Made by a program: the position numbers and the translations under genes
The notes under the pieces: generated by a model
The model's database searches: none
Seen by the model: only the letters and a program-made list of their open reading frames with translations
What the model was told of the DNA's origin: nothing
Shown here: piece by piece, positions 5,073 through 62,845 of the stretch
How positions within the stretch are numbered: the stretch's first letter is position 1
How the letters are laid out: each line of letters starts with the position of its first letter
Origin: Haliotis rufescens
Lineage: Eukaryota
Direction of reading: 5' to 3'
Length of the DNA: 64,000 nt
Assembly: GCF_023055435.1 (NCBI RefSeq)
Contig: NW_025964124.1
Location: forward strand, 1,984,001 to 2,048,000

Positions 5073-5100
5073 CACACGAGTGTAGAGTGTTGTACATATA

Positions 5101-38394: not shown

Positions 38395-39920
38395 ACAGGT
38401 GGTGGTGACGACCTCCGACGTGTCAGTCAGGTAAAGCCCCTCTCCAGCCCAACTGCAGGTTCCTGGACAACTCGACCCTGACGTCTTTGTAACATGGATC
38501 ATCAGCTCGGTTCCAGTTCTCCTCTGGATCTTTCGTATGGTCATAGAGTTCAACTCCCTGTAGTTGATCCCACATGGGTGTATAAATAGGCCTGCCTTTG
38601 AAGTTGATCCACTCTGTGTATCGATACATCTCTGTCCTCATGCTGTAACCCATGACAATGTCCCCCTCAAGTCCGTTGCCCCCTCTGGGGTATTGGGAGA
38701 ATGCTGCAGTTTTCCATGCTTCCAGTGTTGGGTTCGTCATAAGTGGCACCATACTTGTACCCTCTGTGCACAGACTGACATTCTGGGAGTCTGGTGGACA
38801 CTGCTCAAGTTTGGGAAGTCCTGCAGCCTCCACGAGGGTAGGGTAGAGATCAACAAATTCTGTAAGTTTCTCAGTGACAACACCATGATCGGTGACCCCA
38901 GGAACACGAATCATCATGGGGGCATGTGTTGCATCCTCAAAGTTTGTCTGCTTCGCCCATTCAGAATGTTCCCCCAACTGCCATCCATGATCCCCCCAGA
39001 AGGCTATTATTGTATTATTGGTCAAGCCCAGGTTATCCAGCTGGTCAATGACCCTACCAAGTTCGTAATCTACGTAGCTCACACAGCTGTAATAAGCCTG
39101 TCGCATTTCAAGAGTAAGTGTTGTTGGAAATGTAAAGTTAATGTTACCACAATTTTTCAAGTCGTAGGTTTGTAAGTCTTTAAAGTTAGCCATTTTACTG
39201 TAGTTATGCCATGCAATAGCAGGCATTCCTACTGGAGCATAGTAATTTGGTGGTAGCTTCAAACTTTCCAGAGGATAGTAGTCCTTAAACCGTGCGGGAA
39301 AGTTCCAGGTACTATGGGGTTTACGGAAACCCACAGCCAGAAAGAAAGGACGCTCACCTGACCTAGCTTCTGGGGCCACCTCCTTTTGTGGCCAAAAGCT
39401 GATCCTGTAGTGGCTGGGCCTTAGCTCTCTCCTCGGAGACTGCTTCAATAAGAAGATTGTTAGTTATGTACGCATCAGTAGAATGGGTGTAGGGATCAGT
39501 CCATGAAACAGGATCGTCACCTCCGGAGGATGCGCCTGGGTGAAATATTTTCCCCATTCCTATGGTTCTGTACCCATTTTGTTTGAAATACTGGGGCAGT
39601 GTAGTGAAATTACCTCCATACTGACGAAAGTAAGGTCCGATTAGCCAGATGTGGCTTGTGTCAGGGCGTCTGCTGGTCAGGAGGGCTGTCCTGCTTGGAC
39701 TGCATACTGCCACTGAGACGTAAGCTCGCTTTAGGAGGAGGGATCTAGCAGCAAGTGCATCAATATTTGGTGTATGCATCTTTGGATGAACTGGAGATGG
39801 CGCATCTGGTCCGTCATAGGCACCGAGATTGGGTCTCAAATCATCCGAAACTAAAAACAAAATATTCTTCCTTGCATGGACTATTCCTAGGAATAACAAG
39901 TGTGAGACAAATATTTTCAT
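38395..39920 (-). pseudogene. Iduronate-2-sulfatase-like sulfatase pseudogene (inverted copy)
   Basis: Collinear with the three + copies but has a 17-bp deletion (AGAGTCTGCCATTCAGG) at 39390/39391 causing a frameshift, and AGA>TGA at 38423-38425. Confidence 0.88.
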
Positions 39921-40443
39921 TCTCGAAGAGCTGCTCATTTTTGTTACTTGGACACCAGCTGAAATCTTCACTGAGGGCTCATTGTACTGTTCGGTATATA
40001 TATGCTACTTTCTTTCAAAATAGAACAGGTGTGTCTGTTTATCATTCTAAAGCAAAGCTTTGCATGTCTGCTTTTATCAGATGTGTTGACTTTAAAGTGG
40101 CCACCTGCAGTTTTCCAAATATTTCAGATTGTTTGATATATTTTATTCTCACCATTAACAACCTTGCCCCTTTTGACATTGTTTGGGGTGTTTTCCAGCA
40201 CTTATTTAGATCAGTTTACTGAGTTTGTAACATGGAGCAAAATATCCACAGTATCTGATGTTGGGGATAGATAGAGCTGACTAAATAGGATCAGGTGATC
40301 TCCCTCCGTGACTTGGCTGACCATGGATCTGTTGATTCACCTTCCCTATGCCGTGGAGTACTCGGCTGATCATGCTCCATCAGGAGTCGAAATTGGCGTC
40401 TACATTTCAATTTTCTTGAATTCTTTTATTACCATGTTGCAGA

Positions 40444-40823
40444 CCTGTGAAGATCCGCGGTAGAATAGGTCTTCAGCAACATGTGCTTGCGGTAAAAGGT
40501 GACTATGCTTGTCGTAAGAGGCGACTATCGGGATCGGGTCGTCATGTTCGCTGACTTTGTTGATGCATGTCATCGATTCCAATTGCGTGGATCGATGCTC
40601 ATGATGTCAATCACTTGATTGTCTGGTCGAGATTCGATTATTTACAGACCACCGTCATATATAGCTGGAATATTGCTGAGTGCAGCGTTAAACAACAAAC
40701 AAGACAATCACGTGGATCGATGCTCATGATATTAATCACACGATTGTCTGGTCGAGATTCGATTATTTACAGACTCTCGTAATATAGCTGGATTATTGCT
40801 GAGTGTGGCGTTAAACCAACCAA
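40444..40823 (+). mobile_element. SINE-like repeat, third family, with duplicated 3' half
   Basis: 40444-40699 full copy; 40710-40823 repeats its 3' portion. Confidence 0.75.
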
Positions 40824-41228: not shown

Positions 41229-41365
41229 CCGACAAGACTCGGTTGCTGAGTGGGTTGGATCGCTGACTTTGTGTGCTGGCGATTAGGTGCCTCACTCTGG
41301 CTAGTGTGGGTTCGAATCCCAGGCGGGACTCAACCCCAAAAAGTACGAGAATCTGTACTTTACTA
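41229..41365 (+). mobile_element. tRNA-like SINE head
   Basis: A-box-like TTGCTGAGTGG and B-box GGTTCGAATCC; no canonical cloverleaf. Confidence 0.5.
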
Positions 41366-47299: not shown

Positions 47300-47684
47300 G
47301 GAATCGGAACATAATCGCAGTCAATCAGCCATGTCACCGAGCGTGAGCACCTGATTTAGTCAGCTCCCAAACATCAGATACTGTGGATATTTACTTATCT
47401 GCCTGTAAAGCACCTCCAACAATGTCAACAGGGCACGGTCGTTTATGGAAAAAATAAAAGACAACAATTTTAAATATTTGGAAAACTGCAGGTGGCCATT
47501 CTAAATTCCACTCAACTGATAAAAGTAGGCATGCAAAGCTTTGCTTCAGAATGATAGACGAACACACCCTGTTCTTTTTAGACAGAAAGTAGTATATATA
47601 TGCTGAACAGCACAATGAGCCCTCACTGAAATGTTCAGCTAATGTCCAAGTACGATAAATGAGCAGCTCTTTGAGAAGTATGAT
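47300..47684 (+). promoter_or_regulatory. Orphan copy of the sulfatase promoter ending at the start codon
   Basis: Homologous to ~54290-54699 (E-box, GATA, TATA, …GAGAAGTATGAT), then switches to SINE sequence. Confidence 0.75.
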
Positions 47685-48084
47685 CCCGATAGTCGCCTCT
47701 TACGACAAGTATAGTCGCCTTTACGCAAGCATGTGTTCCTGAAGACCTATTCTACCGCGGATCTTCACAGGTCTGCAACATGGTAATGAAAGAATTCGAG
47801 AAAATTGAAATGTAGACGCCAATTTTGAGCATGATCAACCGAGTAATCCACGGCATAGGGAAGGTGAATCAACAGATACATGGTCAGTCAAGTCACGGCG
47901 GGAGATCACCTGATCCTATTTAGTCAGCTCTATCTATCTCCAACATCAGATACTGTGGATATTTTGCTCCATGTTACAAACTCAGTAAACTGATCTAAAT
48001 AAGTGCTTGAAAACACCCCAAACAATGTCAAAAGGGGCAAGGTTGTTAATGGTGAGAATAAAATATATCAAACAATCTGAAATA

Positions 48085-48210
48085 TTTGGAAAACTGCAGG
48101 TGGCCACTTTAAAGTCAACACATCTGATAAAAGCAGACATGCAAAGCTTTGCTTTAGAATGATAAACAGACACACCTGTTCTATTTTGAAAGAAAGTAGC
48201 ATATATATAC
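48085..48210 (+). promoter_or_regulatory. Sulfatase proximal promoter: TGGAAAA-ctg-CAGGTG, TGATAA, TATA-like ATATATATA (also at ~54493-54617, ~61096-61221, and inverted ~39997-40120)
   Basis: Motifs are retained in all five promoter copies; the TATA-like run lies ~80 bp upstream of the ATG. Confidence 0.6.
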
Positions 48211-48286
48211 CGAACAGTACATTGAGCCCTCAGTGAAGATTTCAGCTCGTGTCCAAGTAACAAAAAAGAGCAGCTCTTCGAGAAGT

Positions 48287-49834
48287 ATGATGAAAATATT
48301 TGTCTTACACTTGTTATTCCTAGGAATAGTCGATGCAAAGAAGAATATTTTGTTTTTAGTCTCGGATGATTTGAGACCCAATCTCGGTGCCTATGACGGA
48401 CCAGATGCGCCATCTCCAGTTCATCCAAAGATGCACACACCAAATATTGATGCGCTTGCTGCTAGATCCCTCCTTCTAAAGCGAGCCTACGTCTCAGTGG
48501 CTTTATGCAATCCAAGCAGGACAGCCCTCCTGACCAGCAGACGCCCTGACACAAGCCACATCTGGCTAATCGGACCTTACTTTCGTCAGTATGGAGGTAA
48601 TTTCACTACACTGCCCCAGTATTTCAAGCAAAATGGGTACAGAACCATAGGAATGGGGAAAATATTTCACCCAGGTCCATCCTCCGGAAGTGACGATCCT
48701 GTTTCATGGACTGATCCCTACACCCATGCTACTGATGCGTACATAACTAACAATCTTCTTATTGAAGCGGTCTCCGAGGAGAGAGCTAAGGCCCAGCCAC
48801 TACAAGATCAGATTTTGGCAGAGTCTGCCATTCAGGCACTAAATGAGGTGGCCCCAGAAGCTAGGTCAGGTGAGCATCCTTTCTTTCTGGCTGTGGGTTT
48901 CCGTAAACCCCATATTACCTGGAACTTCCCCGCACGCTTTAAGGACTACTATCCTCTGGAAAGTTTGAAGCTACCACCAAATTACTATGCTCCAGTAGGA
49001 ATGCCTGCTATTGCATGGCATAATTTCAGTAACCTGGCACTCTACAAAGATATGCAAACCTATCACTTGACAAATGTTGGGAACATTAACTTTACATTTC
49101 CAACAACACTTACTCTGGAAATGCGACAAGCTTATTACAGCTGTGTGAGCTATGTAGATTACGAACTTGGTAGGGTCATTGACGAACTGGATAACCTGGG
49201 CTTGACCAATAATACAATAATAGCCTTCTGGGGGGATCATGGATGGCAATTGGGAGAACATGCTGAATGGTTGAAGCAGACTAACTTTGAGGATGCAACA
49301 CATGCCCCGATGATGATTCGTGTTCCGGGGGTTACCGATCATGGTATTGTCACTGAGAAACTAACAGAATTTGTTGATCTCTACCCAACCCTCGTGGAGG
49401 CTGCAGGACTTCCCAAACTTGAGCAGTGTCCACCAGACTCCCAGAATGTCAGTCTGTGCACAGAGGGTACAAGTATGGTGCCACTTATGACGAATCCGAC
49501 ACTGGAAGCATGGAAAACTGCAGCATTCTCCCAATACCCCAGAGGAGGCAACGGACTTGATGGGGACATTGTCATGGGTTACAGCATGAGGACAGATATG
49601 TATCGATACACAGAGTGGATCAACTTCAAAGGCAGGCCTATTTATAAACCCATGTGGGACCAACTACAGGGAGTTGAACTCTATGATCATACGAAAGATC
49701 CAGAGGAGAACTGGAACCGAGCCGATGATCCATCTTACAAAGACGTCAGGGTCGAGTTGTCCAGGAACCTGCAGTTGGGCTGGAGAGGGGCTTTACCTAG
49801 CAGACACGTCGGCGGTCGTCAACACCACCTGTAA
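48287..49834 (+). CDS. Iduronate-2-sulfatase-like formylglycine sulfatase, copy 1 (intronless, 515 aa from MMKIF)
   Basis: Signal peptide MMKIFVLHLLFLGIVDA; KNILFLVSDDLRP, CNPSRTALLTSRRP, GKIFH, GFRKPH, WGDHGWQLGEH, ELYDHTKDPEE. Confidence 0.93.
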   Translation: MMKIFVLHLLFLGIVDAKKNILFLVSDDLRPNLGAYDGPDAPSPVHPKMHTPNIDALAARSLLLKRAYVSVALCNPSRTALLTSRRPDTSHIWLIGPYFRQYGGNFTTLPQYFKQNGYRTIGMGKIFHPGPSSGSDDPVSWTDPYTHATDAYITNNLLIEAVSEERAKAQPLQDQILAESAIQALNEVAPEARSGEHPFFLAVGFRKPHITWNFPARFKDYYPLESLKLPPNYYAPVGMPAIAWHNFSNLALYKDMQTYHLTNVGNINFTFPTTLTLEMRQAYYSCVSYVDYELGRVIDELDNLGLTNNTIIAFWGDHGWQLGEHAEWLKQTNFEDATHAPMMIRVPGVTDHGIVTEKLTEFVDLYPTLVEAAGLPKLEQCPPDSQNVSLCTEGTSMVPLMTNPTLEAWKTAAFSQYPRGGNGLDGDIVMGYSMRTDMYRYTEWINFKGRPIYKPMWDQLQGVELYDHTKDPEENWNRADDPSYKDVRVELSRNLQLGWRGALPSRHVGGRQHHL

Positions 49835-51960
49835 CTACCTTTATTTTTCCATAACTTCTCATGACATAAATTGTCATTATGCAAAGAAGATATGATTAAA
49901 TATCATTGTTACCCAAGATGTGGTTTGCTCATTTTGTTTCCATTTACTTTTAAGTGTTAATGGATACATTGTCTCTGAAAATGAAGATTGGTTAGAGAAA
50001 TGTTCAACCAACATTGTCTCAAGTAACATAGATAACTTCTACCTCTTATGGCGTTGTGTGCGCAATCTGTTGGTTAAGTTTACATTTATAAATAGCAAAC
50101 CCAGCAGATGAACCTGTCCTATGTTGAACTGATTTGAGTCTTTATTGTATTTTTATTGTCAGTGGTTCCATTGTCGATGGTTTCGCAAACACCGGATATC
50201 ATCACTATTAGATAGTGGTTCATAAGTGGCCAGAATTGCTCATGATATAGCCAGAATCCAACTTTTCACAGAGATTTCCTATGTATATGGAAAGTGTTGT
50301 GTTGATTTTATTTTCTGGTGACATAGCTAATTATCACCGGATGTTAGGTAAAGCACATTGGATTTCATTTTCTGTGGTTTCAAGACAGGATTCGATCTAA
50401 TTGAATTCACAACACTAGTAGTAATACTGTTACGTGTCAATTCCCAAATTGAAACAATATATTAACGCAGAAATCTGTACGTAAATGAACTTAGTGTGAA
50501 ACCAACAAACAACCAACAAATGGTAAATACTTAACAAGTGTATTACAAAATTAGCCAGGTTTACACATCAATGCATCAAATACTCGCAAATTACGGAACA
50601 CCATTTGCAATGGCAGTACACAATAGGGTGGTAGTACAATATTCAATGACAGTATATAATATGCAGTGGTCAGTATCAAATGCAAAAATACGGTGATAAT
50701 CATAGATTCACCCAGGGGCAAGAGTGGTCAAGCTTCCGAGATGGACCTAAGCAGGGAATACAGGGTGATCTTCACATGGAAGCTGGTCTTGATGTATTAT
50801 CAGATGAAAATGTGTCATGACATGTGCGAGAGATGTTGTAAAGCTCTATACAATGCTGGGCGAATTTCGCTGTTTCCAGCAGTTACCACACCACCGTAGC
50901 ATCAAAATATAGTAACTTCCTGACGACTGTTTACAAAAATAGTACTATGTTCCTGACGCCTGACCACTGTCCAAATTTAATGCAATGAGCGTCAACCGAA
51001 TCGCAACAGAAACAATGCAGCACAGTTACATTCATTGTTCAATAATACAATACACTGGCATATAACAACAATAACAGGTTCTTGTATACATTTACATTTG
51101 TATGTGTCTGAAACAACTCGTTAAAGTAAATCATATTTAAATAAACTAAGCCAATGAGGTGACGCAAATAAACATGAAAGTGGGTGTTATTTAATGTCAC
51201 AGTATGTGTTACTGCTACAACACAGCAACCTCTGTATAATCAAATCTAGACAAGACAAGCCACTGAATGAAAGCATGTGCAACCCTCTACACCGTTGGAA
51301 TACGGAGACACAACACTAGCCACAGAGTCTGATAATATATTCCCAAGTACTGTCGGATCCTGCCATATGATGTCCTGCAACCGAACAAACTACACCATCA
51401 TGCATCAAGGTTAACTGGAGGCATTGATATACATATACAACTATAACTGAGGTATGGTCTCATAAAACGTCACAAAATGAGAAACGTGTCTTTTCAAACA
51501 AGGTATATTTGGCATAAATGTGGCATATTACGCCAGCTCACTGAGCTTAGTGTATCATCACAGCTCTAGTGGACAGACCGCTTGGCTGGAAAACGGAATG
51601 TCGTGGCTAGGTACACGGCCTCATCCTTCCAAAAGACGTTGAAAGATGACACTTGTTGGTTGCCTACCTGGCACTCGGTTGTCTAGGACTCGGGCCATCA
51701 GTTCGGACTAGTACACAGTGCCAGTGGCCATAAATAAAATGCAATGTAGTATAGACAGGCCCCAATTTAACGGTACACCATGTCGCAGAACAAAGATCGA
51801 GGTATCACAATGACTTCATTCACTATGAGGCCCAGTGAGTTTACTTTAATAAGAAATACTTCATTCTGAGAATGATTCAAGTTGTGATTTGGCTTGCACT
51901 TGTATAGATTGGCCACTTTCTTGTCTACAGGCAATCAAATCTAGCTCTTCACGTCATCCA

Positions 51961-52640
51961 TTTATTATCCCCCGCCACGAAGCGGAAGGGGGATATAGGA
52001 ATGGGTGCCGTCCGTCCGTCCTTCCGTTCTTCCGTCCGGCCGTCCTCCCTCCGTCCGTCACATTTCGTTTCCGGAGCAGATCTTGCAAACTGTACCATAT
52101 TCCTTCACCAAACTTGGCATATAGATCAATCTAGTGGTGAACTGGTGCCTTTTGATAGTTTGGGATTTTTAAAAAAAATATCTTTCGAGTTTCCATGGCA
52201 ACGACTTTGATTTAGAATGAAAATGGCAGTAGTCCTCGTTTCCGGGGCAGATCTTGAAAACCGTACTATATTTCTTCATCAAACTTGGCACATAGATAGA
52301 TCTGGTGGTGAACTGGTGCCTTTTGATAGTTTGGGATTTTTAAAATAGTTATTATTCGAGTTTCCATGGCAACAACTTTAATTTAGACTGAAAATGACGA
52401 TAGTCCTCGTTTCCGGAGCAGATCTTGAAAACCGTACTATATTTCTTCATCAAACTTGGCACATAGATAGATCTAGTGTTGAACTGGTGCCTTTTCATAG
52501 TTTGGGAATGTTTTAAAAAGGTATTTTTTGTTTCCATGGCAACGACTTTGACTTAGACTGAAAATGGCGATAGTCCTCGTTTCCGGAGCAGATCTTGAAA
52601 ACCCTACTATATTTCTTTACATAACTTGGCACATAACGTC
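51961..52640 (+). mobile_element. Helentron-associated (HINE/DINE-1-like) non-autonomous element with ~171-bp internal tandem repeats
   Basis: TTATTATCCCCC…GGGGGATAT inverted repeat, (CCGT)n microsatellite, then a repeat marker at 52071, 52242, 52413 and 52583. Confidence 0.7.
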
Positions 52641-53049
52641 ATCTCACAGTGTTGAATACATTTCCTTTCTTGTTGGTAAGTTCTGTATTGCTTGAGTGTA
52701 TGTACCTCCAAAAGTGTCATGGACACAGTTGTTGCATTCACTGACTAACTTCATACCGAAACACATTTTATTACAAATACAACAGTGAAACTGATCTTAA
52801 ACCTACTCAACTGTATAAACAATATATATTCTTGTCAACCATACTCTGTACTTCACTTGCTTGATAATGATGTTAGAACATACACCGAAACCATCGCTCC
52901 TAATTGTAATAAAGAAGTTGTTTGTCCATATGTCTCATCCTTTCTCATTACAAATTCAGTAACAAATTCTATCATAAACTGCAGATGGAAAAATAACACC
53001 AATAATAACTTTTTTTTAGTGCTGCAATTAGGCCATTTACAAAAAGGCC

Positions 53050-54167
53050 CAGTGAACATAGTTCACAGGAGCTAATGCATTGCACACACCCGACATGCTG
53101 GCCAATACGACATCGTCTTTTGCTGGTTGCCAGTCATGCTGGAATCACGGGTAACACTATGGCTGATGATGCAGCAAAGGCAGCTCTCAACAAATCTGTT
53201 GACACCACTTCTGCTACCATACAGTGACTACAAGACTGTCATTAGGTACTATATCAAAGATCTAATGCAAAAGAAGTGGGACAACCAAGTAGGTTCTAAC
53301 AAAGTACATGCAATAAAACCAACTATCGGTTACACTTACTTGGGTTGTCAGTCCAGATTTGAAGAGGTCATTATGCGACGATGTCGTATTGGCCATTCGC
53401 GTTATACACATGTGTATTTATTGCAAAGTGAATATCCTCCATTCTGTATCCCTTGTGATGAAAGAATCACAGTCAAGCATGTCCTGCTTGACTGTATAGA
53501 TTTTTCCATCACAAGGGATAATTATTTCCAGGTTTCATCCATAAAGGATCTTTAATGTAAGCTCTCATTTAATTCTTGGATTTTTTAATGAAATTGAATT
53601 ATTAGATAAATTTTGATTATATATATTGTAAAAAGTAAGTGATTTTAATTTTGGTAGAATGATTCGATAACTGTGATTGTTTATGACTTTACCTTCAAAG
53701 GGGGTTGAAGTAACGTAAAATAGTTGTCCCCCTGCAAGAGTATGTAAGTCCCAGTTCATGCAAAGTATGTTTCATTTCCATGTTTTTAATCGTAGAATTC
53801 TTATTGTTTTTAAATGATTTCGCTAAAAACTTTCTAACAATCACCAGTGGCCAGAGGGATGGTGTAAATCCTGCTTTGGTACCATGCAGAAAGCAGATGT
53901 ACCGTGGTCCCTTTTATAGTGACCTACCTTTGGTTATTGGTGATCTATAGCCCATTTTTATTGTGTACTGTTATGAATTGTTCAAATTTTATGATGATAT
54001 GCTAGTTTTAAATCTACATCTGAAATAGTCTAGTGCTATTACTGTCCTTTGTCGACAGATTTTAATGTCTATATGTATGTATTATTACCTTATAACTTGA
54101 TTTTGTCACTATATGGCTGAAATATTGCCGATGTGACTTTAAATTTTAAGTCACTCACTCACTCACA
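53050..54167 (+). mobile_element. 3' fragment of an I/Nimb-group LINE (RNase H + CCHC), (ACTC)n tail
   Basis: SHAGITGNTMADDAAK, RCRIGHSRYTH, CIPCDERITVKHVLLDC; 3' UTR ends in TCACTCACTCACTCA. Confidence 0.85.
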
Positions 54168-54673
54168 TAACTATTTCCATTATTAATTACCATCCAACCT
54201 TTATACATTCTCCCATGTCTCCCTCGTTCTTACTTTCCAATGGAGGGATAAACAATATATATCACTGGGCGTAATCAGTAATCCACGGCATCGGAGCATA
54301 ATGGCAGTCAATCAGCCATGTCACCGAGCGTGAGCACCTGATCCTATTTAGTCAGCTCCCCAACATCAGAAACTGTAAATATTTCGCTCCATGCTGCAAA
54401 CTCGGTGGACTTATCTGCCAGTAAAAGACCTCCAACAATGTCAACAGGGCAAGGGTGTTCATGGAGAAAATAAAATACAACAATTTGAAATATTTGGAAA
54501 CTGCAGGTGGCCACTCTAAATTCCACTCAACTGATAAAAGTAGGCATGCAAACCTTTGCTTCAGAATGATAGACGAACACACCCTGTTCTATTTAGACAG
54601 AAAGTAGCATATATATACCGAACAGCGAAGTGAGTCCTCGGTGAAGATTGCAGCTCGTGCCCAAGTGTGAGAA

Positions 54674-56242
54674 ATGAGCAGCTGTTTGAGAAGTATGATG
54701 AAAATATTGGTCTTACACTTGTTAATCCTAGGAATAGTCCATGCAAAGAAGAATATTTTATTTTTAGTTTCGGATGATTTGAGACCCAATCTCGGTGCCT
54801 ATGACGGACCAGATGCGCCATCTCCAGTTCATCCAAAGATGCACACACCAAATATTGATGCGCTTGCTGCTAGATCCCTCCTTCTTAAACGAGCCTACGT
54901 CTCAGTGGCTTTATGCAGTCCAAGCAGGACAGCCCTCCTGACCAGCAGACGCCCTGACACAAGCCACATCTGGCTAATCGGACCTTACTTTCGTCAGTAT
55001 GGAGGTAATTTCACTACACTGCCCCAGTATTTCAAACAAAATGGGTACAGAACCATAGGAATGGGGAAAATATTTCACCCAGGCGCATCCTCCGGAGGTG
55101 ACGATCCTGTTTCATGGACTGATCCCTACACCCATGCTACTGATGCGTACATAACTAACAATCTTCTTATTGAAGCGGTCTCCGAGGAGAGAGCTAAGGC
55201 CCAGCCACTACAGGATCAGATTTTGGCAGAGTCTGCCATTCAGGCACTAAAGGAGGTGGCCCCAGAAGCTAGGTCAGGTGAGCGTCCTTTCTTTCTGGCT
55301 GTGGGTTTCCGTAAACCCCATATTACCTGGAACTTTCCCGCACGCTTTAAGGACTACTATCCTCTGGAAAGTTTGAAGCTACCACCAAATTACTATGCTC
55401 CAGTAGGAATGCCTGCTATTGCATGGCATAATTTCAGTAACCTGGCACACTTCAAAGATATGCAAACCTATCACTTGACAAATGTTGGGAACATTAACTA
55501 TACATTTCCAACAATGCTTACTCTAGAAATGCGACAGGCTTATTACAGCTGTGTGAGCTACGTAGATTACGAACTTGGTAGGGTCATTGACGAGCTGGAT
55601 AACCTGGGCTTGACCAATAATACAATAATAGCCTTCTGGGGGGATCATGGATGGCAATTGGGGGAACATGCTGAATGGGCGAAGGAGACGAACTTTGAGG
55701 ATGCAACACATGCCCCGATGATGATTCGTGTTCCCGGGGTCACCGATCATGGTATTGTCACTGAGAAACTAACAGAATTTGTTGATCTCTACCCAACCCT
55801 CGTGGAGGCTGCAGGACTTCCCAAACTTGAGCAGTGTCCACCAGACTCCCAGAATGTCAGTCTGTGCACAGAGGGTACAAGTATGGTGCCACTTATGACG
55901 AACCCGACACTGGAAGCGTGGAAAACTGCAGCATTCTCCCAATACCCCAGAGGAGGCAACGGACTTGAGGGGGACATTGTCATGGGTTACAGCATGAGGA
56001 CAGAGATGTATCGCTACACAGAGTGGATCAACTTCAAAGGCAGGCCTATTTATAAACCCATGTGGGATCAACTACAGGGAGTTGAACTCTATGATCATAC
56101 GAAAGATCCAGAGGAGAATTGGAACCGAGCCGAGGATCCATCTTACAAAGACGTCAGGGTCGAGTTGTCCAGGAACCTGCAGTTAGGCTGGAGAGGGGCT
56201 TTACCTGACAGACACGTCGGAGGTCGTCAACACCACCTGTAA
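54674..56242 (+). CDS. Iduronate-2-sulfatase-like sulfatase, copy 2 (intronless; start 54674 or 54695)
   Basis: Intact ORF, signal peptide, CSPSR motif and all catalytic motifs. Confidence 0.93.
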   Translation: MSSCLRSMMKILVLHLLILGIVHAKKNILFLVSDDLRPNLGAYDGPDAPSPVHPKMHTPNIDALAARSLLLKRAYVSVALCSPSRTALLTSRRPDTSHIWLIGPYFRQYGGNFTTLPQYFKQNGYRTIGMGKIFHPGASSGGDDPVSWTDPYTHATDAYITNNLLIEAVSEERAKAQPLQDQILAESAIQALKEVAPEARSGERPFFLAVGFRKPHITWNFPARFKDYYPLESLKLPPNYYAPVGMPAIAWHNFSNLAHFKDMQTYHLTNVGNINYTFPTMLTLEMRQAYYSCVSYVDYELGRVIDELDNLGLTNNTIIAFWGDHGWQLGEHAEWAKETNFEDATHAPMMIRVPGVTDHGIVTEKLTEFVDLYPTLVEAAGLPKLEQCPPDSQNVSLCTEGTSMVPLMTNPTLEAWKTAAFSQYPRGGNGLEGDIVMGYSMRTEMYRYTEWINFKGRPIYKPMWDQLQGVELYDHTKDPEENWNRAEDPSYKDVRVELSRNLQLGWRGALPDRHVGGRQHHL

Positions 56243-58389
56243 CTACATTTACTGTCCATAACTTCTCATGTCATAAATTGTCATTATGCAAATAAGATAT
56301 GATTAAATATCGTTATAACCAAAGATGTGATTTGCTCATTTTGTTTCCACTTACTTTTAAGTGTGAATGGATATTGATTTACATAAAACAGAAACATTGT
56401 CTCTGAAAATGTAGATTGGTTAGAGATCTGGTCAACCAACATTGTCTCAAGTAACATAGATAACTTCTGCCGCTCATGGCGTTGTGTGCGCAATCTGTTG
56501 GTTAAGTTTACATTTATAAAATAGCAAACCCAGCAGATGAACCTGTCCTATGTTGAACTGATTTGAGTCTTTATTTTATTTTTATTGTCAGTGGTTCCAT
56601 TGTCGATGGTTTCGCAAACACCGGATATCATCACTATTAGATAGTGGTTCATAAGTGGCCAGAATTGCTCATGATATAGCCAGAATCCAACTTTTCACAG
56701 ATATTTCTTATGTATATGGAAAGTGTTGTGTTGATTTTATTTTCTGGTGACATAGCTAATTATCACCGGATGTTAGATAAAGCACATTGGATTTCATTTT
56801 CTGTGGTTTCAAGACAGGATTCGATCTAATTGAATTCACAACACTAGTAGTAATACTGTTACGTGTCAATTCCCAAATTGAAACAATATATTAACGCAGA
56901 AATCTGTACGTAAATGAACTTAGTGTGAAACCAACAAACAACCAACAAATGGTAAATACTTAACAAGTGTATTACAAAATTAACCAGGTTTACACATCAA
57001 TGCATCAAATACTCGCAAATTACGGAACACCATTTGCAATGGCAGTACACAATAGGGTGGTAGTACAATATTAAATGACAGTATATAATATGCAGTGGTC
57101 AGTATCAAATGCAAAAATACGGTGATAATCATAGATTCACCCAGGGGCAAGAGTGGTCAAGCTTCCGAGATGGACCTAAGCAGGGAATACAGGGTGATCT
57201 TCACATGGAAGCTGGTCTTGATGTATTATCAGATGAAAATGTGTCATGACATGTGCGAGAGATGCTGTAAAGCTCTATACAATGCTGGGCGAATTTCGCT
57301 GTTTCCAGCAGTTACCACACCACCGTAGCATCAAAATATAGTAACTTCCTGACGACTGTTTACATAAAATAGTACTATGTTCCTGACGCCTGACCACTGT
57401 CCAAATTTAATGCAATGAGCGTCAACCGAATCGCAACAGAAACAATGCAGCACAGTTACACTCATTGTTCAATAATACAATACACTGGCATATAACAACA
57501 ATAACAGGTCCTTGTATACATTTACATTTGTATGTGTCTGAAACAACTCGTTAAAGTAAATCATATTTAAATATAAATAACCCAATGAGGTGACGCAAAT
57601 AAACATGAAAGTGGGTGTTATTTAATGTCACAGTATGTGTTACTGCTACAACACAGCAACCTCTGTATAATCAAATCTAGACAAGACCAGGCCACTGAAT
57701 GAAAGCATGTGCAACCCTCTACACCGTTGGAATACGGAGACACAACACTAGCCACAGAGTCTGATAATAAATTCCCAAGTACTGTCGGATCCTGCCATAT
57801 GATGTCCTGCAACCGAACAAACTACACCATCATGCATCAAGGTTAACTGGAGGCACTGATATACATATACAACTATAACTGAGGTATGGTCTCATTAAAC
57901 GTAACTAAATGAGAAACGTGTCTTTTCAAACAAGGTATATTTGGCATAAATGTGGCATATTACGCCAGCTCACTGAGCTTAGTGTATCATCACAGCTCTA
58001 GTGGACAGACCGCTTGGCTGGAAAACGGAATGTCGTGGCTACACGGCCTCATCCTTCCAAAAGACGTTGAAAGATGACACTTGTTGGTTGCCTACCTGGC
58101 ACTCGGTTGTCTAGGACTCGGGCCATCAGTTCGGACTAGTACACAGTGCCAGTGGCCATAAATAAAATGCAATGTAGTATAGACAGGCCCCAATTTAACG
58201 GTACACCATGTCGCAGAACAAAGATCGAGATATCACAATGACTTCACTCACTATGAGGCCCAGTGAATTTCCTTTAATAAGACATACTTCATTCTGAGAA
58301 TGATTCAAGTTGTGATTTGGCTTGCACTTGTATAGATTGGCCACTTTCTTGTCTACAGGCAATCAAATCTAGCTCTTCACGTCATCCAT

Positions 58390-59238
58390 TTATTATCCCC
58401 CGCCACGAAGCGGAAGGGGGATATAGGAATGGGTGCCGTCCGTCCGTCCTTCCGTTCTTCCGTCCGGCCGTCCTCCCTCCGTCCGTCACATTTCGTTTCC
58501 GGAGCAGATCTTGCAAACTGTACCATATTCCTTCACCAAACTTGGCATATAGATCAATCTAGTGGTGAACTGGTGCCTTTTGATAGTTTGGGATTTTTAA
58601 AAAAAATATCTTTCGAGTTTCCATGGCAACGACTTTGATTTAGAATGAAAATGGCAGTAGTCCTCGTTTCCGGGGCAGATCTTGAAAACCGTACTATATT
58701 TCTTCATCAAACTTGGCACATAGATAGATCTGGTGGTGAACTGGTGCCTTTTGATAGTTTGGGATTTTTAAAATAGTTATTATTCGAGTTTCCATGGCAA
58801 CAACTTTGATTAAGACTGAAAATGACATTAGTCCTCGTTTCCGGAGCAGATCTTGAAAACCGTACTATATTTCTTCATCAAACTTGGCACATAGAGAGAT
58901 CTAGTGGTGAACTGGTGCCTTTTGATAGTTTGGGAATGTTTTAAAATGTTATTTTTTGTTTCCATGGCAACGACTTTGACTTAGACTGAAAATGGCGATA
59001 GTCCTCGTTTCCGGAGCAGATCTTGAAAACCGTACTATATTTCTTCACCATACTTGGCGCATAGATAGGTCTAGTGGTGAACTGGTGTCTTTTGATAGTT
59101 TGGGAATTTTTTAAAATGGTATTTTTTGTTTCCATGGCAACGACTTTGACTTAGACTGAAAATGGCGATAGTCCTCGTTTCCGGAGCAGATCTTGAAAAC
59201 CCTACTATATTTCTTTACCAAACTTGGCACATAACGTC
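58390..59238 (+). mobile_element. Duplicate HINE-like element with one extra ~170-bp unit
   Basis: Repeat marker at 58499, 58670, 58841, 59011 and 59181. Confidence 0.7.
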
Positions 59239-59647
59239 ATCTCACAGTGTTGAATACATTTCCTTTCTTGTTGGTAAGTTCTGTATTGCTTGAGTGTATG
59301 TACCTCCAAAAGTGTCATGGACACAGTTGTTGCATTCACTGACTAACTTCATACAGAAACACAACTTATTACAAATACAACAGTGAAACTGATCTTAAAC
59401 CTACTCAACTGTATAAACAATATATATTCTTGTCAACCATACTCTGTACTTCACTTGCTTGATAATGATGTTAGAACATACACCGAAACCATCGCTCCTA
59501 ATTGTAATAAAGAAGTTGTTTGTCCATATGTCTCATCCTTACTCATTACAAATTCAGTAACAAATTCTATCATAAACTGCAGATGGAAAAATAACACCAA
59601 TAATAACTTTTTTTTAGTGCTGCAATTAGGCCATTTACAAAAAGGCC

Positions 59648-60770
59648 CAGTGAACATAGTTCACAGGAGCTAATGTATTGCACACACCCGACATGCTGGC
59701 CAATACGACATCGTCTTTTGCTGGTTGCCAGTCATGCTGGATTCACGGGTAACACTATGGCTGATGATGCAGCAAAGGCAGCTCTCAACAAATCTGTGAC
59801 ACCACTTCTGCTACCATACAGTGACTACAAGACTGTCATTAGGTACTATATCAAAGATCTAATGCAAAAGAAGTGGGACAACCAAGTAGGTTCTAATAAA
59901 TTACATGCAATAAAACCAACTATCGGTTACACTTACTTGGGTTGTCAGTCCAGATTTGAAGAGGTCATTATGCGACGATGTCGTATTGGCCATTCGCGTT
60001 ATACACATGTGTATTTATTGCAAAGTGAATATCCTCCATTCTGTATCCCTTGTGATGAAAGAATCACAGTCAAGCATGTCCTGCTTGACTGTATAGATTT
60101 TTCCATCACAAGGGATAATTATTTCCAGGTTTCATCCATAAAGGATCTTTAATGTAAGCTCTCATTTAATTCTTGGATTTTTTAATGAAATTGAATTATT
60201 AGATAAATTTTGATTATATATATTGTAAAAAGTAAGTGATTTTAATTTGGTAGAATGATTCGATAACTGTGATTGTTTATGACTTTACCTTCAAAGGGGG
60301 TTGAAGTAACGTAAAATAATTGTCCCCCTGCAAGAGTATGTAAGAGACAGTTCATTCAAAGTATGTTTCATTTCCATGTTTTTAATCGTAGGATTCTTAT
60401 TGTTTTTAAATGATTTCGCTAAAAACTTTCTAACAATCACCAGTGGCCAGAGGGATGGTGTAAATCCTGCTTTGGTACCATGCAGGAAGCAGATGTACCG
60501 TAAGTCCCCATGGTCCCTTGTATGGTGACCTACCTTTGGTTATTGGTGATCTATAGCCCATTTTTATTGTGTACTGTTATGAATTGTTCAAATTTTATGA
60601 TGATATGCTAGTTTTAAATCTACATCTGTGATAGTCAAGTGTTTCACTGTCCTTTGTCGACAGATTTTAATGTCTATATGTATGTATTATTCCTTATAAC
60701 TTGTTTAGTCACTATATGGCTGAAATATTGCCGATGTGACTTTAAATTTTAAGTCACTCACTCAATCACA
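59648..60770 (+). mobile_element. Duplicate I/Nimb-group LINE 3' fragment
   Basis: ORF 59673-60152 with RNase H and CCHC motifs; same tail as 53050-54167. Confidence 0.85.
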
Positions 60771-61276
60771 TAACTATTTCCATTATTAATTTCCATCCCA
60801 CCTTTATACATTCTCCCATGTCTCCCTCGTTCTAACTCTCCTATGGAGAAATAAGCAATATATATCACCAAGCCTAATCAGTAATCCACGGAATCGGAAC
60901 ATAATGGCAGTCAATCAGCCATGTCACCGAACGATAGCACCTGATCCTATTTAGTCAGCTCCCCAACATCAGAAACTGTAAATATTTCGCTCCATGCTGC
61001 AAACTCGGTGGACTTATCTACCAGTAATGCACCTCCAACAATGTCAACAGGGCAAGGTTGTTCATGGAGAAAATAAAATACAACAATTTGAAATATTTGG
61101 AAACTGCAGGTGGCCACTCTAAATTCCACTCAACTGATAAAAGTAGGCATGCAAAGCTTTGCTTCAGAATGATAGACGAACACACCCTGTTCTATTTAGA
61201 CAGAAAGTTGCATATATATACTGAACAGCACAGTGAGTCCTTGGTGAAGATTGCAGCTCGTGCCCAAGTGTGAGAA

Positions 61277-62845
61277 ATGAGCAGCTGTTTGAGAAGTATG
61301 ATGAAAATATTGGTCTTACACTTGTTAATCCTAGGAATGGTCCATGCAAAGAAGAATATTTTATTTTTAGTTTCGGATGATTTGAGACCCGATCTTGGTG
61401 CCTATGACGGACCAGATGCGCCATCTCCAGTTCATCCAAAGATGCACACACCAAATATTGATGCGCTTGCTGCTAGATCCCTCCTTCTTAAGCGAGCTTA
61501 CGTCTCAGTGGCTTTATGCAGTCCAAGCAGGACAGCCCTCCTGACCAGCAGACGCCCTGACACAAGCCACATCTGGCTAATCGGACCTTACTTTCGTCAG
61601 TATGGAGGTAATTTCACTACACTGCCCCAGTATTTCAAACAAAATGGGTACAGAACCATAGGAATTGGGAAAATATTTCACCAAGGCGCATCCTCCGGAG
61701 GTGACGATCCTGTTTCATGGACTGATCCCTACACCCATGCTACTGATGCGTACAGAACTAACAATCTTCTTATTGAAGCGGTCTCCGAGGAGAGAGCTAA
61801 GGCCCAGCCACTACAGGATCAGATTTTGGCAGAGTCTGCCATTCTGGCACTAAAGAAGGTGGCCCCAAAAGCTAGGTCAGGTGAGCGTCCTTTCTTTCTG
61901 GCTGTGGGTTTCCGTAAACCCCATGTTACGTGGAACTTCCCCGCACGCTTTAAGGACTACTATCCTCTGGAAAGTCTGAAGCTACCACCAAATTACTATG
62001 CTCCTGTAGGAATGCCTGCCATTGCATGGAATAATTTCAGTCGCCTGGCACGCTTCAAAGATATGCAAACCTATCACTTGACAAATGTTGGGAACATTAA
62101 CTTTACATTTCCAACAACACTTACTCTGGAAATGCGACAAGCTTATTACAGCTGTGTGAGCTACGTAGATTACGAGCTTGGTAGGGTCATTGACGAGCTG
62201 GATAACTTGGGTTTGACCAATAATACAATAATAGCCTTCTGGGGGGATCATGGATGGCAATTGGGGGAACATTCTGAATGGGAGAAAGAGACGAACTTTG
62301 AGGATGCAACACATGCCCCGATGATGATTCGTGTTCCCGGGGTCACCGATCATGGTGTTGTCACTGAGAAACTAACAGAATTTGTTGATCTCTACCCTAC
62401 CCTCGTGGAGGCTGCAGGACTTCCCAAACTTGGGCAGTGTCCACCAGACTCCCAGAATGTCAGTCTGTGCACAGAGGGTACAAGTATGGTGCCACTTATG
62501 ACGAACCCGACACTGGAAGCGTGGAAAACTGCAGCATTCTCCCAATACCCCAGAGGAGGCAACGGACTTGAGGGGGACATTGTCATGGGTTACAGCATGA
62601 GGACAGAGATGTATCGCTACACAGAGTGGATCAACTTCAAAGGCAGGCCTATTTATAAACCCATGTGGGACCAACTACAGGGAGTTGAACTCTATGATCA
62701 TACGAAAGATCCAGAGGAGAATTGGAACCGAGCCGAGGATCCATCTTACAAAGACGTCAGGGTCGAGTTGTCCAGGAACCTGCAGTTAGGCTGGAGAGGG
62801 GCTCTACCTAGCAGACACGTCGGACATCGTCAACACCACCTGTAA
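61277..62845 (+). CDS. Iduronate-2-sulfatase-like sulfatase, copy 3 (intronless; start 61277 or 61298)
   Basis: Intact ORF, signal peptide, CSPSR motif and all catalytic motifs. Confidence 0.93.
   Translation: MSSCLRSMMKILVLHLLILGMVHAKKNILFLVSDDLRPDLGAYDGPDAPSPVHPKMHTPNIDALAARSLLLKRAYVSVALCSPSRTALLTSRRPDTSHIWLIGPYFRQYGGNFTTLPQYFKQNGYRTIGIGKIFHQGASSGGDDPVSWTDPYTHATDAYRTNNLLIEAVSEERAKAQPLQDQILAESAILALKKVAPKARSGERPFFLAVGFRKPHVTWNFPARFKDYYPLESLKLPPNYYAPVGMPAIAWNNFSRLARFKDMQTYHLTNVGNINFTFPTTLTLEMRQAYYSCVSYVDYELGRVIDELDNLGLTNNTIIAFWGDHGWQLGEHSEWEKETNFEDATHAPMMIRVPGVTDHGVVTEKLTEFVDLYPTLVEAAGLPKLGQCPPDSQNVSLCTEGTSMVPLMTNPTLEAWKTAAFSQYPRGGNGLEGDIVMGYSMRTEMYRYTEWINFKGRPIYKPMWDQLQGVELYDHTKDPEENWNRAEDPSYKDVRVELSRNLQLGWRGALPSRHVGHRQHHL

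What the first reader, a model, noticed from the sequence alone, without database searches (positions are those of the whole stretch)
38395..62845. Expanding array of intronless secreted IDS-like sulfatases diversifying at the substrate pocket
Seen: four close paralogues whose differences cluster beside catalytic motifs (order: inverted copy, copy 1, 2, 3). These are AVCSPSR/ALCNPSR/ALCSPSR/ALCSPSR; FHPGA/FHPGP/FHPGA/FHQGA; KPHST/KPHIT/KPHIT/KPHVT; HNYSKMANF/HNFSNLALY/HNFSNLAHF/NNFSRLARF; EHSEWAKQ/EHAEWLKQ/EHAEWAKE/EHSEWEKE. The catalytic Cys, His, Lys and Asp are invariant, and long intergenic stretches are almost identical. Known: in formylglycine sulfatases these His/Lys residues bind sulfate, and neighbouring residues set sugar specificity; vertebrate IDS is a multi-exon lysosomal gene. 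Inference: a host-encoded, neofunctionalising enzyme set for desulfating dietary (e.g. algal) sulfated polysaccharides.
Basis: partly seen in the sequence, partly recalled or inferred. Interest (0 to 1): 0.8.

Follow-up and report, generated by a model that had tools for sequence, protein, structure and literature searches.

The report
Abalone tandem IDS-like sulfatase genes
Three working copies and one broken copy of an intron-free sulfatase gene lie side by side in an abalone genome and differ mostly next to the catalytic site; they are one small, young branch of a very large sulfatase gene expansion whose substrates are still unknown.

Summary
Three intact tandem genes (c1, c2, c3; 94-96.5% identical proteins) and one inverted copy are present, and all five quoted motif series are exact. 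The inverted copy, however, is broken by a 17-bp frameshifting deletion.

The genes are single-exon, signal-peptide-bearing formylglycine sulfatases of the IDS clade (SulfAtlas S1_7). The genome is Haliotis rufescens or a very close relative. It also keeps a separate multi-exon true IDS orthologue and two FGE loci.

Contigs from three runs guessed to be RNA cover only 54653-56311, which fits a compact unspliced mRNA.

Within the array, amino-acid changes concentrate within one residue of positions homologous to human IDS catalytic or substrate-contact residues: N14:S2 there against N29.5:S38.5 elsewhere (p=0.002). Local omega is 1.66 and not significantly above 1, so positive selection is not shown.

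The proteins lack two human IDS cleft loops and replace R273, Y348 and H226, so they are not iduronate-2-sulfatases of the human type. A dietary (algal) substrate is plausible but untested, because run tissues were coded.

The array is one of many. The genome has at least 49 IDS-like matches and at least 76 Sulfatase-domain matches. This scan already noted seven other sulfatase arrays on other pieces of this genome.

Verdict: a new member of a known kind, of moderate interest.

The parts
38395..39920 (-). Inverted copy ('inv'): IDS-like sulfatase gene broken by a 17-bp deletion (junction 39391/39390), with an early TGA at 38425-38423; probable recent pseudogene or null allele
   Evidence: terminal-branch N18.5:S22.5, similar to the intact copies
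40011..40535 (-). Upstream segment of the inverted copy, 97-100% identical to the upstream segment of c1 (47682-48232); inv and c1 lie head to head
48287..49834 (+). Copy 1 (c1): intact single-exon CDS, 515 aa from MMK; FGly motif CNPSR
54674..56242 (+). Copy 2 (c2): intact single-exon CDS, 522 aa (515 aa from the conserved MMK at 54695); FGly motif CSPSR; five N-x-S/T sequons
54653..56311 (+). Extent of contigs from three runs guessed to be RNA on c2: a compact unspliced transcript. Flanking unique bins are empty in those runs but covered in the DNA-like run
   Evidence: tables 2 and 8
54610..54618 (+). TATATATA, a TATA-like box about 35 nt upstream of the first transcript contig base
   Evidence: read from the sequence; function inferred
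56291..56308 (+). AATAAG and ATTAAA poly(A)-signal-like hexamers just before the last transcript contig base (56311)
   Evidence: read from the sequence; function inferred
61277..62845 (+). Copy 3 (c3): intact single-exon CDS, 522 aa; the most diverged intact copy (P136Q, I160R, N256R, H259R, A336E)
47884..64000 (+). Three direct repeat units of about 6.4-6.6 kb (47884-52635 / 54312-59063 / 60915-window end), 93.8-96.5% identical. Closest pair changes along the unit: c2+c3 upstream, c1+c2 downstream
55427..55486 (+). Hypervariable loop in c2 (codons 252-271, WHNFSNLAHFKDMQTYHLTNVGN region), aligned to the human IDS loop 264-273 that holds D269 and R273
   Evidence: the inv version of the patch has no other donor in the genome
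52065..52635 (.). 171-bp tandem repeat in the c1-c2 spacer (3.3 copies); its counterpart at 58493-59233 (4.3 copies) lies in the c2-c3 spacer

Best explanation
This is a young, lineage-restricted tandem array of single-exon genes for formylglycine-dependent sulfatases of the IDS clade (SulfAtlas S1_7), in the genome of Haliotis rufescens or a very close relative.

Shown here:
- There are three intact copies and one frameshifted inverted copy.
- All catalytic and metal-binding residues and the C-x-P-S-R motif are intact.
- The genome encodes FGE, and it keeps a separate multi-exon true IDS orthologue.
- c2-type sequence is present in runs guessed to be RNA, as an unspliced message of about 1.66 kb.
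- Amino-acid differences between copies are enriched next to catalytic and substrate-contact positions.
- Compared with human IDS, the cleft is remodelled: the K479 loop and the C171-C184 loop are absent, and R273 becomes F/Y, Y348 becomes E/Q and H226 becomes R.

Inferred:
- The proteins enter the ER through an N-terminal signal peptide and are converted by FGE.
- They act as Ca2+-dependent sulfatases on sulfated glycans other than the human IDS substrate.
- The copies have begun to differ in substrate or subsite preference.
- The array evolves by unequal crossing-over and gene conversion with birth-and-death turnover.

The most likely physiological role is desulfation of ingested algal sulfated polysaccharides in the digestive gland, either in the lumen or in lysosomes. 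That last step is the least certain.
For: Identity:
- Pfam Sulfatase 1.7e-46 to 6.6e-46 plus SGSH_C, in 3 of 3 intact copies.
- Best solved relatives are human IDS 5fql at 6.2e-90 and P18_S1_7 6hhm at 1.2e-54; the next is 5e-29. 6HHM and IDS are both S1_7.
- His at the IDS-specific H335 position.

Species: two paralogues are 100% identical over 505 aa to proteins named H. rufescens.

True IDS elsewhere: C583 has at least 7 exons and keeps the KY, FHKPH, D..R and DKP features.

FGE: two multi-exon loci.

Expression: in 3 of 3 runs guessed to be RNA, contigs cover 54653-56311 only, with depth 0 in bins 54419-54609 and 56329-56710. The DNA-like run covers 30 of 30 bins. TATA-like and poly(A) signals bracket this span.

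Divergence pattern:
- Near sites N14:S2 against far sites N29.5:S38.5, OR 8.9, p=0.002.
- Omega 1.66 near against 0.22 far, and 6 of 497 circular shifts reach the observed N count.
- A similar contrast in one C35 pair, L013-L014 (10:2 vs 73:74, p=0.034).

Mosaic history: which two copies are closest changes along the unit.

Context: abalone hepatopancreas fucoidan-degrading and sulfatase activity was reported in 1967. As of 2018 no fucoidan sulfatase sequence was known from any organism, and invertebrate activities were known only from activity reports (passage and reference list of PMC6315715).
Against: - Omega at cleft-adjacent codons is not significantly above 1 (binomial p=0.38).
- Whole-gene pairwise dN/dS is 0.24-0.38.
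- Sites variable in the array are the family's generally variable sites, so relaxed constraint explains them equally well.
- In the sister C90 clade and on the stem branch the contrast is weak (OR 1.75, p=0.12; OR 2.2, p=0.33).
- In the C35 cluster, 2 of 5 informative pairs go the other way (OR 0.38 and 0.65).
- 'Near' is defined in 1-D by my hand-mapped alignment to human IDS, not by 3-D distance.
- The RNA label of the runs is the tool's guess, and tissues are coded, so no link to the digestive gland is shown.
- The same intronless family occurs in bivalves, annelids and sponges. A 35-member IDS family is reported in the vent worm Alvinella, so expansion is not tied to macroalgal grazing.
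- One of the four copies is already dead.
Confidence: 0.55

Rival explanations
1. Neutral birth-and-death turnover. The array is an ordinary product of unequal crossing-over in a very large sulfatase family. The differences next to the catalytic residues sit in tolerant loops under relaxed constraint and carry no functional divergence between copies.
For: Omega near is 1.66 and not distinguishable from 1. Array-variable sites have high family-wide entropy, 2.28 vs 1.25 bits, p=2e-6. One copy is a pseudogene. An earlier follow-up in this scan called another abalone sulfatase array 'ordinary gene turnover' (not checked here). Replication in the C35 cluster is mixed.
Against: The positions concerned are homologous to residues named as substrate contacts, or as flexible cleft residues, in human IDS: D269, R273, Y348 and the neighbours of K135, H229 and K347. 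At position 259 there were three successive replacements, at 256 two and at 336 two within a very young clade. A run from another organism label carries a further loop variant, R256/R259/Y260.
Confidence: 0.27
2. Endogenous role. The enzymes degrade or remodel the animal's own sulfated glycans (mucus, extracellular matrix, lysosomal turnover) rather than food polysaccharides.
For: The clade derives from a lysosomal GAG enzyme family. Expansions occur in non-herbivores: 35 IDS-family genes in Alvinella, discussed there with sulfotransferases and tube glycans. Mussel and scallop papers treat digestive-gland sulfatases as lysosomal.
Against: A true IDS orthologue that keeps the human substrate-contact residues already exists at C583. 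The array proteins have lost those contacts. Dozens of rapidly turning-over copies fit a varied external substrate better than a fixed endogenous one (inference).
Confidence: 0.13
3. Artefact or foreign DNA. The copies are assembly duplicates or haplotigs, or a bacterial contaminant or recent horizontal transfer.
For: The genes are intronless. The exact proteins are absent from the 15-billion-protein collection (0 of 6 look-ups).
Against: The copies differ by 3-6% in protein and have distinct flanks on one 4.05-Mb contig. Independent runs under six organism labels hold the sequence, and the DNA-like run covers gene and spacers. The proteins are closer to human IDS (305 bits) than to the bacterial S1_7 enzyme (189 bits). 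Paralogues lie on at least 7 other contigs, and homologues occur across molluscs, annelids and sponges.
Confidence: 0.03

Closest known systems
Human iduronate-2-sulfatase (IDS, PDB 5FQL; SulfAtlas S1_7)
   Same: Best solved relative (6.2e-90). Same two-subdomain sulfatase architecture by Pfam. All ten active-site residues are kept, including the IDS-specific His335; the CxPSR motif is present; an N-terminal signal sequence is present.
   Different: Single exon rather than multi-exon. The 9-residue K479 loop and the 11-residue C171-C184 loop are absent, and there is an 8-residue insertion after the DD motif. R273 becomes F/Y, Y348 becomes E/Q, H226 becomes R and D269 becomes N/K/R. The genome has its own multi-exon IDS orthologue elsewhere, so this is a paralogous clade and probably has another substrate.
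'Iduronate 2-sulfatase-like' gene models of other Haliotis species (e.g. P0001/P0002 H. cracherodii, P0003 H. asinina, P0004 H. rubra)
   Same: Same intronless IDS-like family, 80-85% identical. The C90 array of this genome and H. cracherodii P0001/P0002 form the sister clade.
   Different: The window's three proteins are not in the collection (0 of 6 exact look-ups; nearest 85%). They form a separate, younger clade with its own loop variants.
Bacterial S1_7 algal-polysaccharide sulfatases (P18_S1_7 ulvan endo-xylose-2-sulfatase, 6HHM; kappa-carrageenan 4-sulfatases)
   Same: Same SulfAtlas subfamily by best hits. Second-best solved relative (1.2e-54). They show that S1_7 enzymes can act on algal polysaccharides.
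   Different: Much more distant than human IDS; prokaryotic and encoded in polysaccharide utilisation loci. No substrate can be transferred by homology.
IDS-family expansion in the annelid Alvinella pompejana (PTHR45953, 35 genes)
   Same: A lophotrochozoan genome with a strongly over-represented IDS family (passages of PMC12403961).
   Different: A different phylum and ecology. That paper links the expansion to sulfated glycan chemistry, tube formation or symbiosis, not diet. The passages read report no array structure or site analysis.
Glucosinolate sulfatase of Plutella xylostella (S1_10, from an ARSB-like duplicate)
   Same: An animal-encoded sulfatase paralogue recruited to act on a dietary sulfated compound (passage of PMC5066984). 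This is the kind of neofunctionalisation proposed here.
   Different: A different subfamily, a small-molecule substrate, and biochemically proven; nothing is proven for the abalone genes.

Membership tests
Type I formylglycine-dependent sulfatase (Pfam PF00884; SulfAtlas family S1) | Sulfatase domain above the curated cut-off | tested here: met
   159.4, 157.4 and 159.1 bits against a cut-off of 25, in 3 of 3 intact copies
Type I formylglycine-dependent sulfatase (Pfam PF00884; SulfAtlas family S1) | C-x-P-x-R formylglycine motif | tested here: met
   CSPSR (c2, c3, inv) and CNPSR (c1); Cys and Arg are invariant in 138 of 138 family sequences
Type I formylglycine-dependent sulfatase (Pfam PF00884; SulfAtlas family S1) | Metal-binding and catalytic residues (human IDS D45, D46, R88, K135, H138, H229, D334, K347) | tested here: met
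   All are present at the aligned positions 34, 35, 85, 132, 135, 216, 324 and 337 in the four copies
Type I formylglycine-dependent sulfatase (Pfam PF00884; SulfAtlas family S1) | A formylglycine-generating enzyme available in the same organism | tested here: met
   PF03781 matches over the cut-off at two multi-exon loci, C35:3.12 Mb and C390:2.91 Mb
Type I formylglycine-dependent sulfatase (Pfam PF00884; SulfAtlas family S1) | FGly actually formed, and sulfate-ester hydrolysis | not testable with these tools
   Needs protein chemistry
SulfAtlas subfamily S1_7 (IDS clade) | Closest characterised or solved relatives are S1_7 members | tested here: met
   5fql/6ioz (IDS) at 6e-90 and 6hhm (P18_S1_7) at 1.2e-54; the next, non-S1_7, chains are at <=5e-29. 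Subfamily labels come from PMC5066984, PMC9096561 and PMC9825549
SulfAtlas subfamily S1_7 (IDS clade) | His in place of the usual Asn after the second metal-binding Asp (human H335) | tested here: met
   D324-H325 in all copies; 138 of 138 in the family alignment
SulfAtlas subfamily S1_7 (IDS clade) | Assignment by the SulfAtlas HMM or tree | not testable with these tools
   SulfAtlas HMMs are not among the libraries offered
Orthologue of iduronate-2-sulfatase (EC 3.1.6.13) | Substrate-contact residues from the IDS docking study (N167, H226, R273, Y348, K479) | tested here: not met
   Only N167 (N162) is kept, 1 of 5. H226 becomes R, R273 becomes F/Y, Y348 becomes E/Q, and the K479 loop is absent
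Orthologue of iduronate-2-sulfatase (EC 3.1.6.13) | It is the genome's conserved multi-exon IDS locus | tested here: not met
   A separate gene of at least 7 exons at C583:5178101-5191787 keeps the EWSKY, FHKPH, WNPWTDLRER and SDKP features (compared exon by exon, exons not joined)
Orthologue of iduronate-2-sulfatase (EC 3.1.6.13) | Lysosomal targeting and activity on IdoA-2S of heparan or dermatan sulfate | not testable with these tools
   Five N-x-S/T sequons exist, but mannose-6-phosphate tagging cannot be predicted

The most novel reading that the evidence does not exclude
The intronless IDS-like (S1_7) family, of which this array is a young branch, encodes the long-unidentified molluscan 'glycosulfatases'. 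In particular it may include an alpha-L-fucose-2-O-sulfatase acting on brown-algal fucoidan. Alpha-L-fucose-2-sulfate resembles alpha-L-iduronate-2-sulfate in ring configuration and sulfate position. On this reading the loop 252-260 and the residues flanking K132, H216 and K337 are the specificity switch that lets duplicates track different algal polysaccharides. Invertebrate fucoidan-sulfatase activities (abalone 1967, Patella 1971, Pecten 2001) are cited in PMC6315715, which states that fucoidan sulfatase sequences were unknown. The stereochemical argument is my own inference.
Probability: 0.15. Interest if true: 0.7.

Novelty: new member of a known kind. Interest (0 to 1): 0.4.

Why it matters
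Abalone and other grazing molluscs digest heavily sulfated algal polysaccharides. Abalone, limpet and scallop digestive glands have long been known as sources of sulfatase activity. The open-access literature I could search names no gene for these activities and does not describe the abalone IDS-like arrays.

This locus gives three near-identical, apparently transcribed genes. They differ at about 18-30 of 515 residues, and a third of the changes lie next to the catalytic centre. That makes them a natural mutagenesis series for finding what sets specificity in S1_7 sulfatases.

The locus also shows that an animal genome can hold more than 70 single-exon sulfatase genes beside its conserved lysosomal set.

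The finding itself is an ordinary young tandem duplication in a family already annotated in other Haliotis genomes. Its value lies in enabling experiments, not in a new principle.

Tried and rejected
Gene conversion from a distant paralogue as the source of the divergent loop patch in the inverted copy. A 131-bp search of the whole genome gave 7 matches. The best non-self matches were the array's own copies at 83-87% and the C90 copies at 77-79%, so no donor was found. An older coalescence of that patch remains possible.

Positive selection. Pairwise NG86 gave 0.24-0.38. The partitioned count gave omega 1.66 near the functional sites, not significant. No codon-model software (codeml, HyPhy) was available, so site models were not run.

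3-D mapping. The tools give no model coordinates, so I mapped by hand from the HMMER alignment to 5FQL onto residues named in PMC5472762. I did not run structure prediction or fold search.

Spacer ORFs. Six ORFs of 96-159 aa gave no Pfam family at E<=0.01, apart from a sub-threshold HTH_32 hit at 0.0071. My first impression that 59673-60152 is a retrotransposon RNase H piece is therefore unsupported.

Replication in the C35 cluster was mixed.

Tissue of expression could not be determined, because run, organism and study names are coded.

Literature. Seven searches found no paper on abalone IDS-like or intronless sulfatase arrays. Subscription journals and supplements were not visible. Supplementary tables of PMC12403961 and Supplementary Fig. 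3 of PMC5472762 may bear on family counts and on the residue alignment.

I read passages only (find mode) of PMC5549309, PMC5159873, PMC12403961, PMC5472762, PMC6315715, PMC5870069, PMC5066984, PMC5700196, PMC9096561 and PMC9825549. I read no paper in full.

Full report
WHAT IS THERE

The region holds four homologous genes. Three are intact single ORFs on the + strand: c1 at 48233/48287-49834, c2 at 54674-56242 and c3 at 61277-62845. One inverted copy on the - strand is split into ORFs of 202 aa (39363-39971) and 341 aa (38423-39448).

A self-comparison shows three direct repeat units of about 6.4-6.6 kb:
- 47884-52635 vs 54312-59063: 95.6% over 4781 columns.
- 52065-57397 vs 58664-64000: 96.5% over 5346 columns.
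- 47907-50967 vs 60938-64000: 93.8%.

It also shows an inverted segment, 38349-40535 vs 49880-47682, at 93.8% over 2214 columns.

The nucleotide alignment explains why the inverted copy is split. A 17-bp deletion (junction 39391/39390) lies between two GGCA repeats that are present in the intact copies. There is also an AGA>TGA change 10 codons before the normal stop.

From the conserved MMK start, the intact proteins differ at 18 (c1-c2), 20 (c2-c3) and 30 (c1-c3) of 515 residues.

WHAT THE GENES ARE

All three intact proteins carry Pfam Sulfatase (1.7e-46 to 6.6e-46) and SGSH_C. Against solved structures, 83 distinct sequences matched at E<=0.001:
- Human iduronate-2-sulfatase 5fql/6ioz: 6-7e-90.
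- 6hhm: 1.2e-54.
- Everything else: <=5e-29.

6HHM is the S1_7 ulvan xylose-2-sulfatase P18_S1_7. IDS defines S1_7, a large and polyspecific subfamily (passages).

Mapping the alignment onto the residues named in the IDS structure paper (passages) gives the following.
- All ten active-site residues are kept, at c2 positions 34, 35, 81, 85, 132, 135, 216, 324, 325 and 337. This includes the IDS-specific His335.
- Of the substrate contacts proposed by docking, only N167 is kept.
- H226 is Arg, R273 is Phe/Tyr and Y348 is Glu/Gln.
- The 9-residue loop carrying K479 and the 11-residue C171-C184 loop are absent.

The N-terminus (MMKILVLHLLILGIVHA|KK) looks like a cleavable signal peptide. That is my reading; no predictor was run. 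c2 has five N-x-S/T sequons.

WHOSE GENOME, AND THE FAMILY AROUND IT

The window is C346:1984001-2048000 of a 1.33-Gb, 615-contig assembly. Two paralogues from contig C35 are 100% identical over 505 aa to proteins that the database names Haliotis rufescens. The C90 copies are 96.5-97.6% identical to H. cracherodii proteins. The genome is therefore red abalone or a very close relative.

A six-frame search with c2 gave 49 matches at E<=1e-10 (83 of 163 candidates scored). Of the 30 loci fetched, 18 hold an uninterrupted ORF of >=480 aa. The matches comprise:
- this array;
- a three-copy array on C90 (about 85% identical);
- a cluster of about 20 on C35 (27.54-27.74 Mb);
- singletons on C42, C556, C1 and C534.

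A search with PF00884 gave 76 matches at E<=1e-20 (81 of 264 candidates scored), nearly all as single open frames, including a very large array on C112. Both counts are lower bounds.

A different, multi-exon homologue lies at C583:5178101-5191787. It has at least 7 exon matches. Examined exon by exon, it keeps the human-like EWSKY, FHKPH, WNPWTDLRER and SDKP features. That gene is the true IDS orthologue, and the window genes belong to a paralogous, intronless clade.

FGE is present at two multi-exon loci.

In a protein tree of 44 selected sequences, the array is sister to the C90 copies plus H. cracherodii P0001/P0002, with H. rubra and H. asinina proteins outside. I chose the rows: 18 own-genome copies and 26 of the 120 listed hits. 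The array clade therefore arose within the North Pacific abalone lineage.

The word search found 7964 proteins at E<=0.001 among 8000 candidates. The best 120 include gastropods, bivalves, annelids and sponges at 54-61% identity. None is closer than 85%. The exact window proteins are absent from the collection in 0 of 6 look-ups.

IS IT EXPRESSED?

The one run search listed 24 runs, of which 19 hold the c2 CDS or part of it. Fourteen of these are small contig sets that the tool guesses to be RNA, and they span six coded organism labels.

I laid four runs on 52700-58400.
- In the three runs guessed to be RNA (X1, X4, X6; three organism labels, three studies), contigs on unique sequence lie only between 54653 and 56311.
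- Depth is 0 in bins 54419-54609 and 56329-56710.
- The large DNA-like run X16 covers 30 of 30 bins.
- X1 pieces match c2 with 0-2 differences.
- No joint (intron) was reported inside the gene.
- The remaining covered bins are high-depth repeats.

A TATATATA lies at 54610-54618, and AATAAG/ATTAAA at 56291-56308. These bracket the span as expected for a 1.66-kb unspliced mRNA.

There are three caveats. The RNA label is a guess. Contigs cannot give expression levels. Tissues are hidden by the coding.

One X6 contig carries R256/R259/Y260, a loop variant not present in the window (table 3).

DO THE DIFFERENCES CLUSTER AT THE POCKET?

Whole-gene pairwise dN/dS is 0.24-0.38, with dS of 0.05-0.14.

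I built a codon alignment of the four array copies and the three C90 copies, and an ML tree: (c1,((c2,c3)87,inv)51), with C90 as outgroup. I then counted changes by codon parsimony.

I took as functional positions all 16 mappable residues named in the passages of the IDS paper: ten active-site residues plus W337, Y348, N167, R273, H226 and D269. Branches inside the array clade, excluding the inverted copy's tip, gave:
- 41 codons within +-1 of those positions: N14/S2.
- The other 457 mature codons: N29.5/S38.5.
- Fisher OR 8.9, p=0.002.
- With +-2, +-3 and +-4: OR 4.1, 3.7 and 5.4 (p=0.012, 0.015 and 0.001).

Omega is 1.66 near and 0.22 far, and the near value is not significantly above 1 (p=0.38). 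Only 6 of 497 circular shifts of the N vector reach 14.

The changes include repeated replacements at 256 (N>R, N>K), 259 (N>L, N>H, H>R) and 336 (A>L, A>E). They also include P136Q, S82N, I217V/S and Q338E.

Results against the reading:
- The C90 clade (OR 1.75, p=0.12) and the stem branch (OR 2.2, p=0.33) show only weak trends.
- Among C35 pairs, L013-L014 repeats the pattern (10:2 vs 73:74, p=0.034) and L015-L018 leans that way (7:0 vs 28:14, p=0.17). L018-L023 is flat, L015-L023 and L016-L015 go the other way, and L020-L021 is uninformative. These pairs overlap and are not independent.
- The array-variable sites are the family's most variable sites (entropy 2.28 vs 1.25 bits, p=2e-6).
- About two thirds of the replacements lie elsewhere: in the signal peptide, in helix 190-204 and in the C-terminal tail.
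- Proximity is 1-D only.

HISTORY OF THE ARRAY

Flank divergence is 1.9% (c1-c2, 2775 bp), 3.3-3.8% (c2-c3) and 3.2% (c1-c3). This is lower than the synonymous divergence of the CDS, 0.072, 0.052 and 0.092 respectively.

The closest pair changes along the unit.
- Upstream 400 bp: c2 and c3 are closest (15 mismatches, against 62 to c1).
- First downstream kilobase: c1 and c2 are closest (14 against 27-28).

c1's upstream 400-550 bp is 97-100% identical to that of the inverted copy. This mosaic fits unequal crossing-over and gene conversion.

The inverted copy's loop patch is 13-17% different from its siblings, with synonymous changes as well. It has no better donor elsewhere in the assembly. 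Either it escaped homogenisation or it evolved fast.

The inverted copy's own branch has N18.5/S22.5, like the working genes. Its inactivation is therefore recent, or it is a null allele.

COMPARISON WITH WHAT IS KNOWN, AND NOVELTY

The genes are members of the S1 formylglycine sulfatases and, by best hits and the His335 hallmark, of S1_7. They are not IDS orthologues.

'Iduronate 2-sulfatase-like' models are already annotated in several Haliotis genomes. An over-represented IDS family has been reported in Alvinella. Arylsulfatase B expansion in molluscs has been linked to algal diets.

My seven literature searches found no description of abalone IDS-like or intronless sulfatase arrays. A 2018 paper states that fucoidan sulfatase sequences were then unknown, with invertebrate activities known only from activity reports, and cites abalone, Patella and Pecten activities. 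A study of the European abalone gut microbiota reports low sulfatase content in the dominant bacteria, which leaves room for host enzymes.

This scan's notebook lists seven other first-reader notes on sulfatase arrays on other pieces of this genome. One was followed up and judged ordinary turnover. I did not check those notes, beyond finding the C35 and C112 arrays myself.

VERDICT

This is a real tandem array of three working genes and one broken gene from a large, already annotated family, and it appears to be transcribed. Replacements are enriched next to the catalytic centre to a statistically supported degree, which fits incipient substrate divergence but does not prove positive selection. 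The dietary function is a reasonable hypothesis that remains untested.

Noticed in passing
window 1-5094: A 39-bp satellite of 128.7 copies at 94% match, strongly G-rich on the + strand (GC skew 0.63-0.70 in the first 4 kb).
   Followed up: no
window 23346-24330: A 42-bp minisatellite of 23.5 copies at 92% match, with a more diverged continuation to about 24950.
   Followed up: no
window 52065-52635 and 58493-59233: A 170/171-bp tandem repeat (3.3 and 4.3 copies) inside the spacers of the sulfatase array; copy-number change here accounts for part of the difference in unit length.
   Followed up: partly
window 59673-60152 (+): A 159-aa ORF in the c2-c3 spacer, absent from the c1-c2 spacer. It looked like a retroelement fragment by eye, but Pfam found nothing at E<=0.01.
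   Followed up: partly
window 52891-53081 and 54037-54227: Spacer segments with very high contig depth in all four runs laid (up to 180,000 in the DNA-like run), with many loose ends. These are interspersed repeats that are also present in the runs guessed to be RNA.
   Followed up: no
G000:C583:5178101-5191787 (L033, L036): The genome's multi-exon true IDS orthologue, with at least 7 exons. It keeps the human-like substrate-contact motifs that the intronless family has lost.
   Followed up: partly
G000:C112:62.47-62.73 Mb; also C13, C615, C24: Very large arrays of single-ORF Sulfatase-domain genes of another subfamily: at least 27 matches on C112 alone, among 76 matches genome-wide at E<=1e-20.
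   Followed up: no
window 55439-55452 (c2 codons 256, 259, 260): A contig from run X6 (organism label D) carries R256/R259/Y260, a fourth combination in the hypervariable loop that is not encoded in the window (table 3).
   Followed up: no
window 13023-17240: The scan's notebook lists a first-reader note on an IFI44-like GTPase here; I did not examine it.
   Followed up: no
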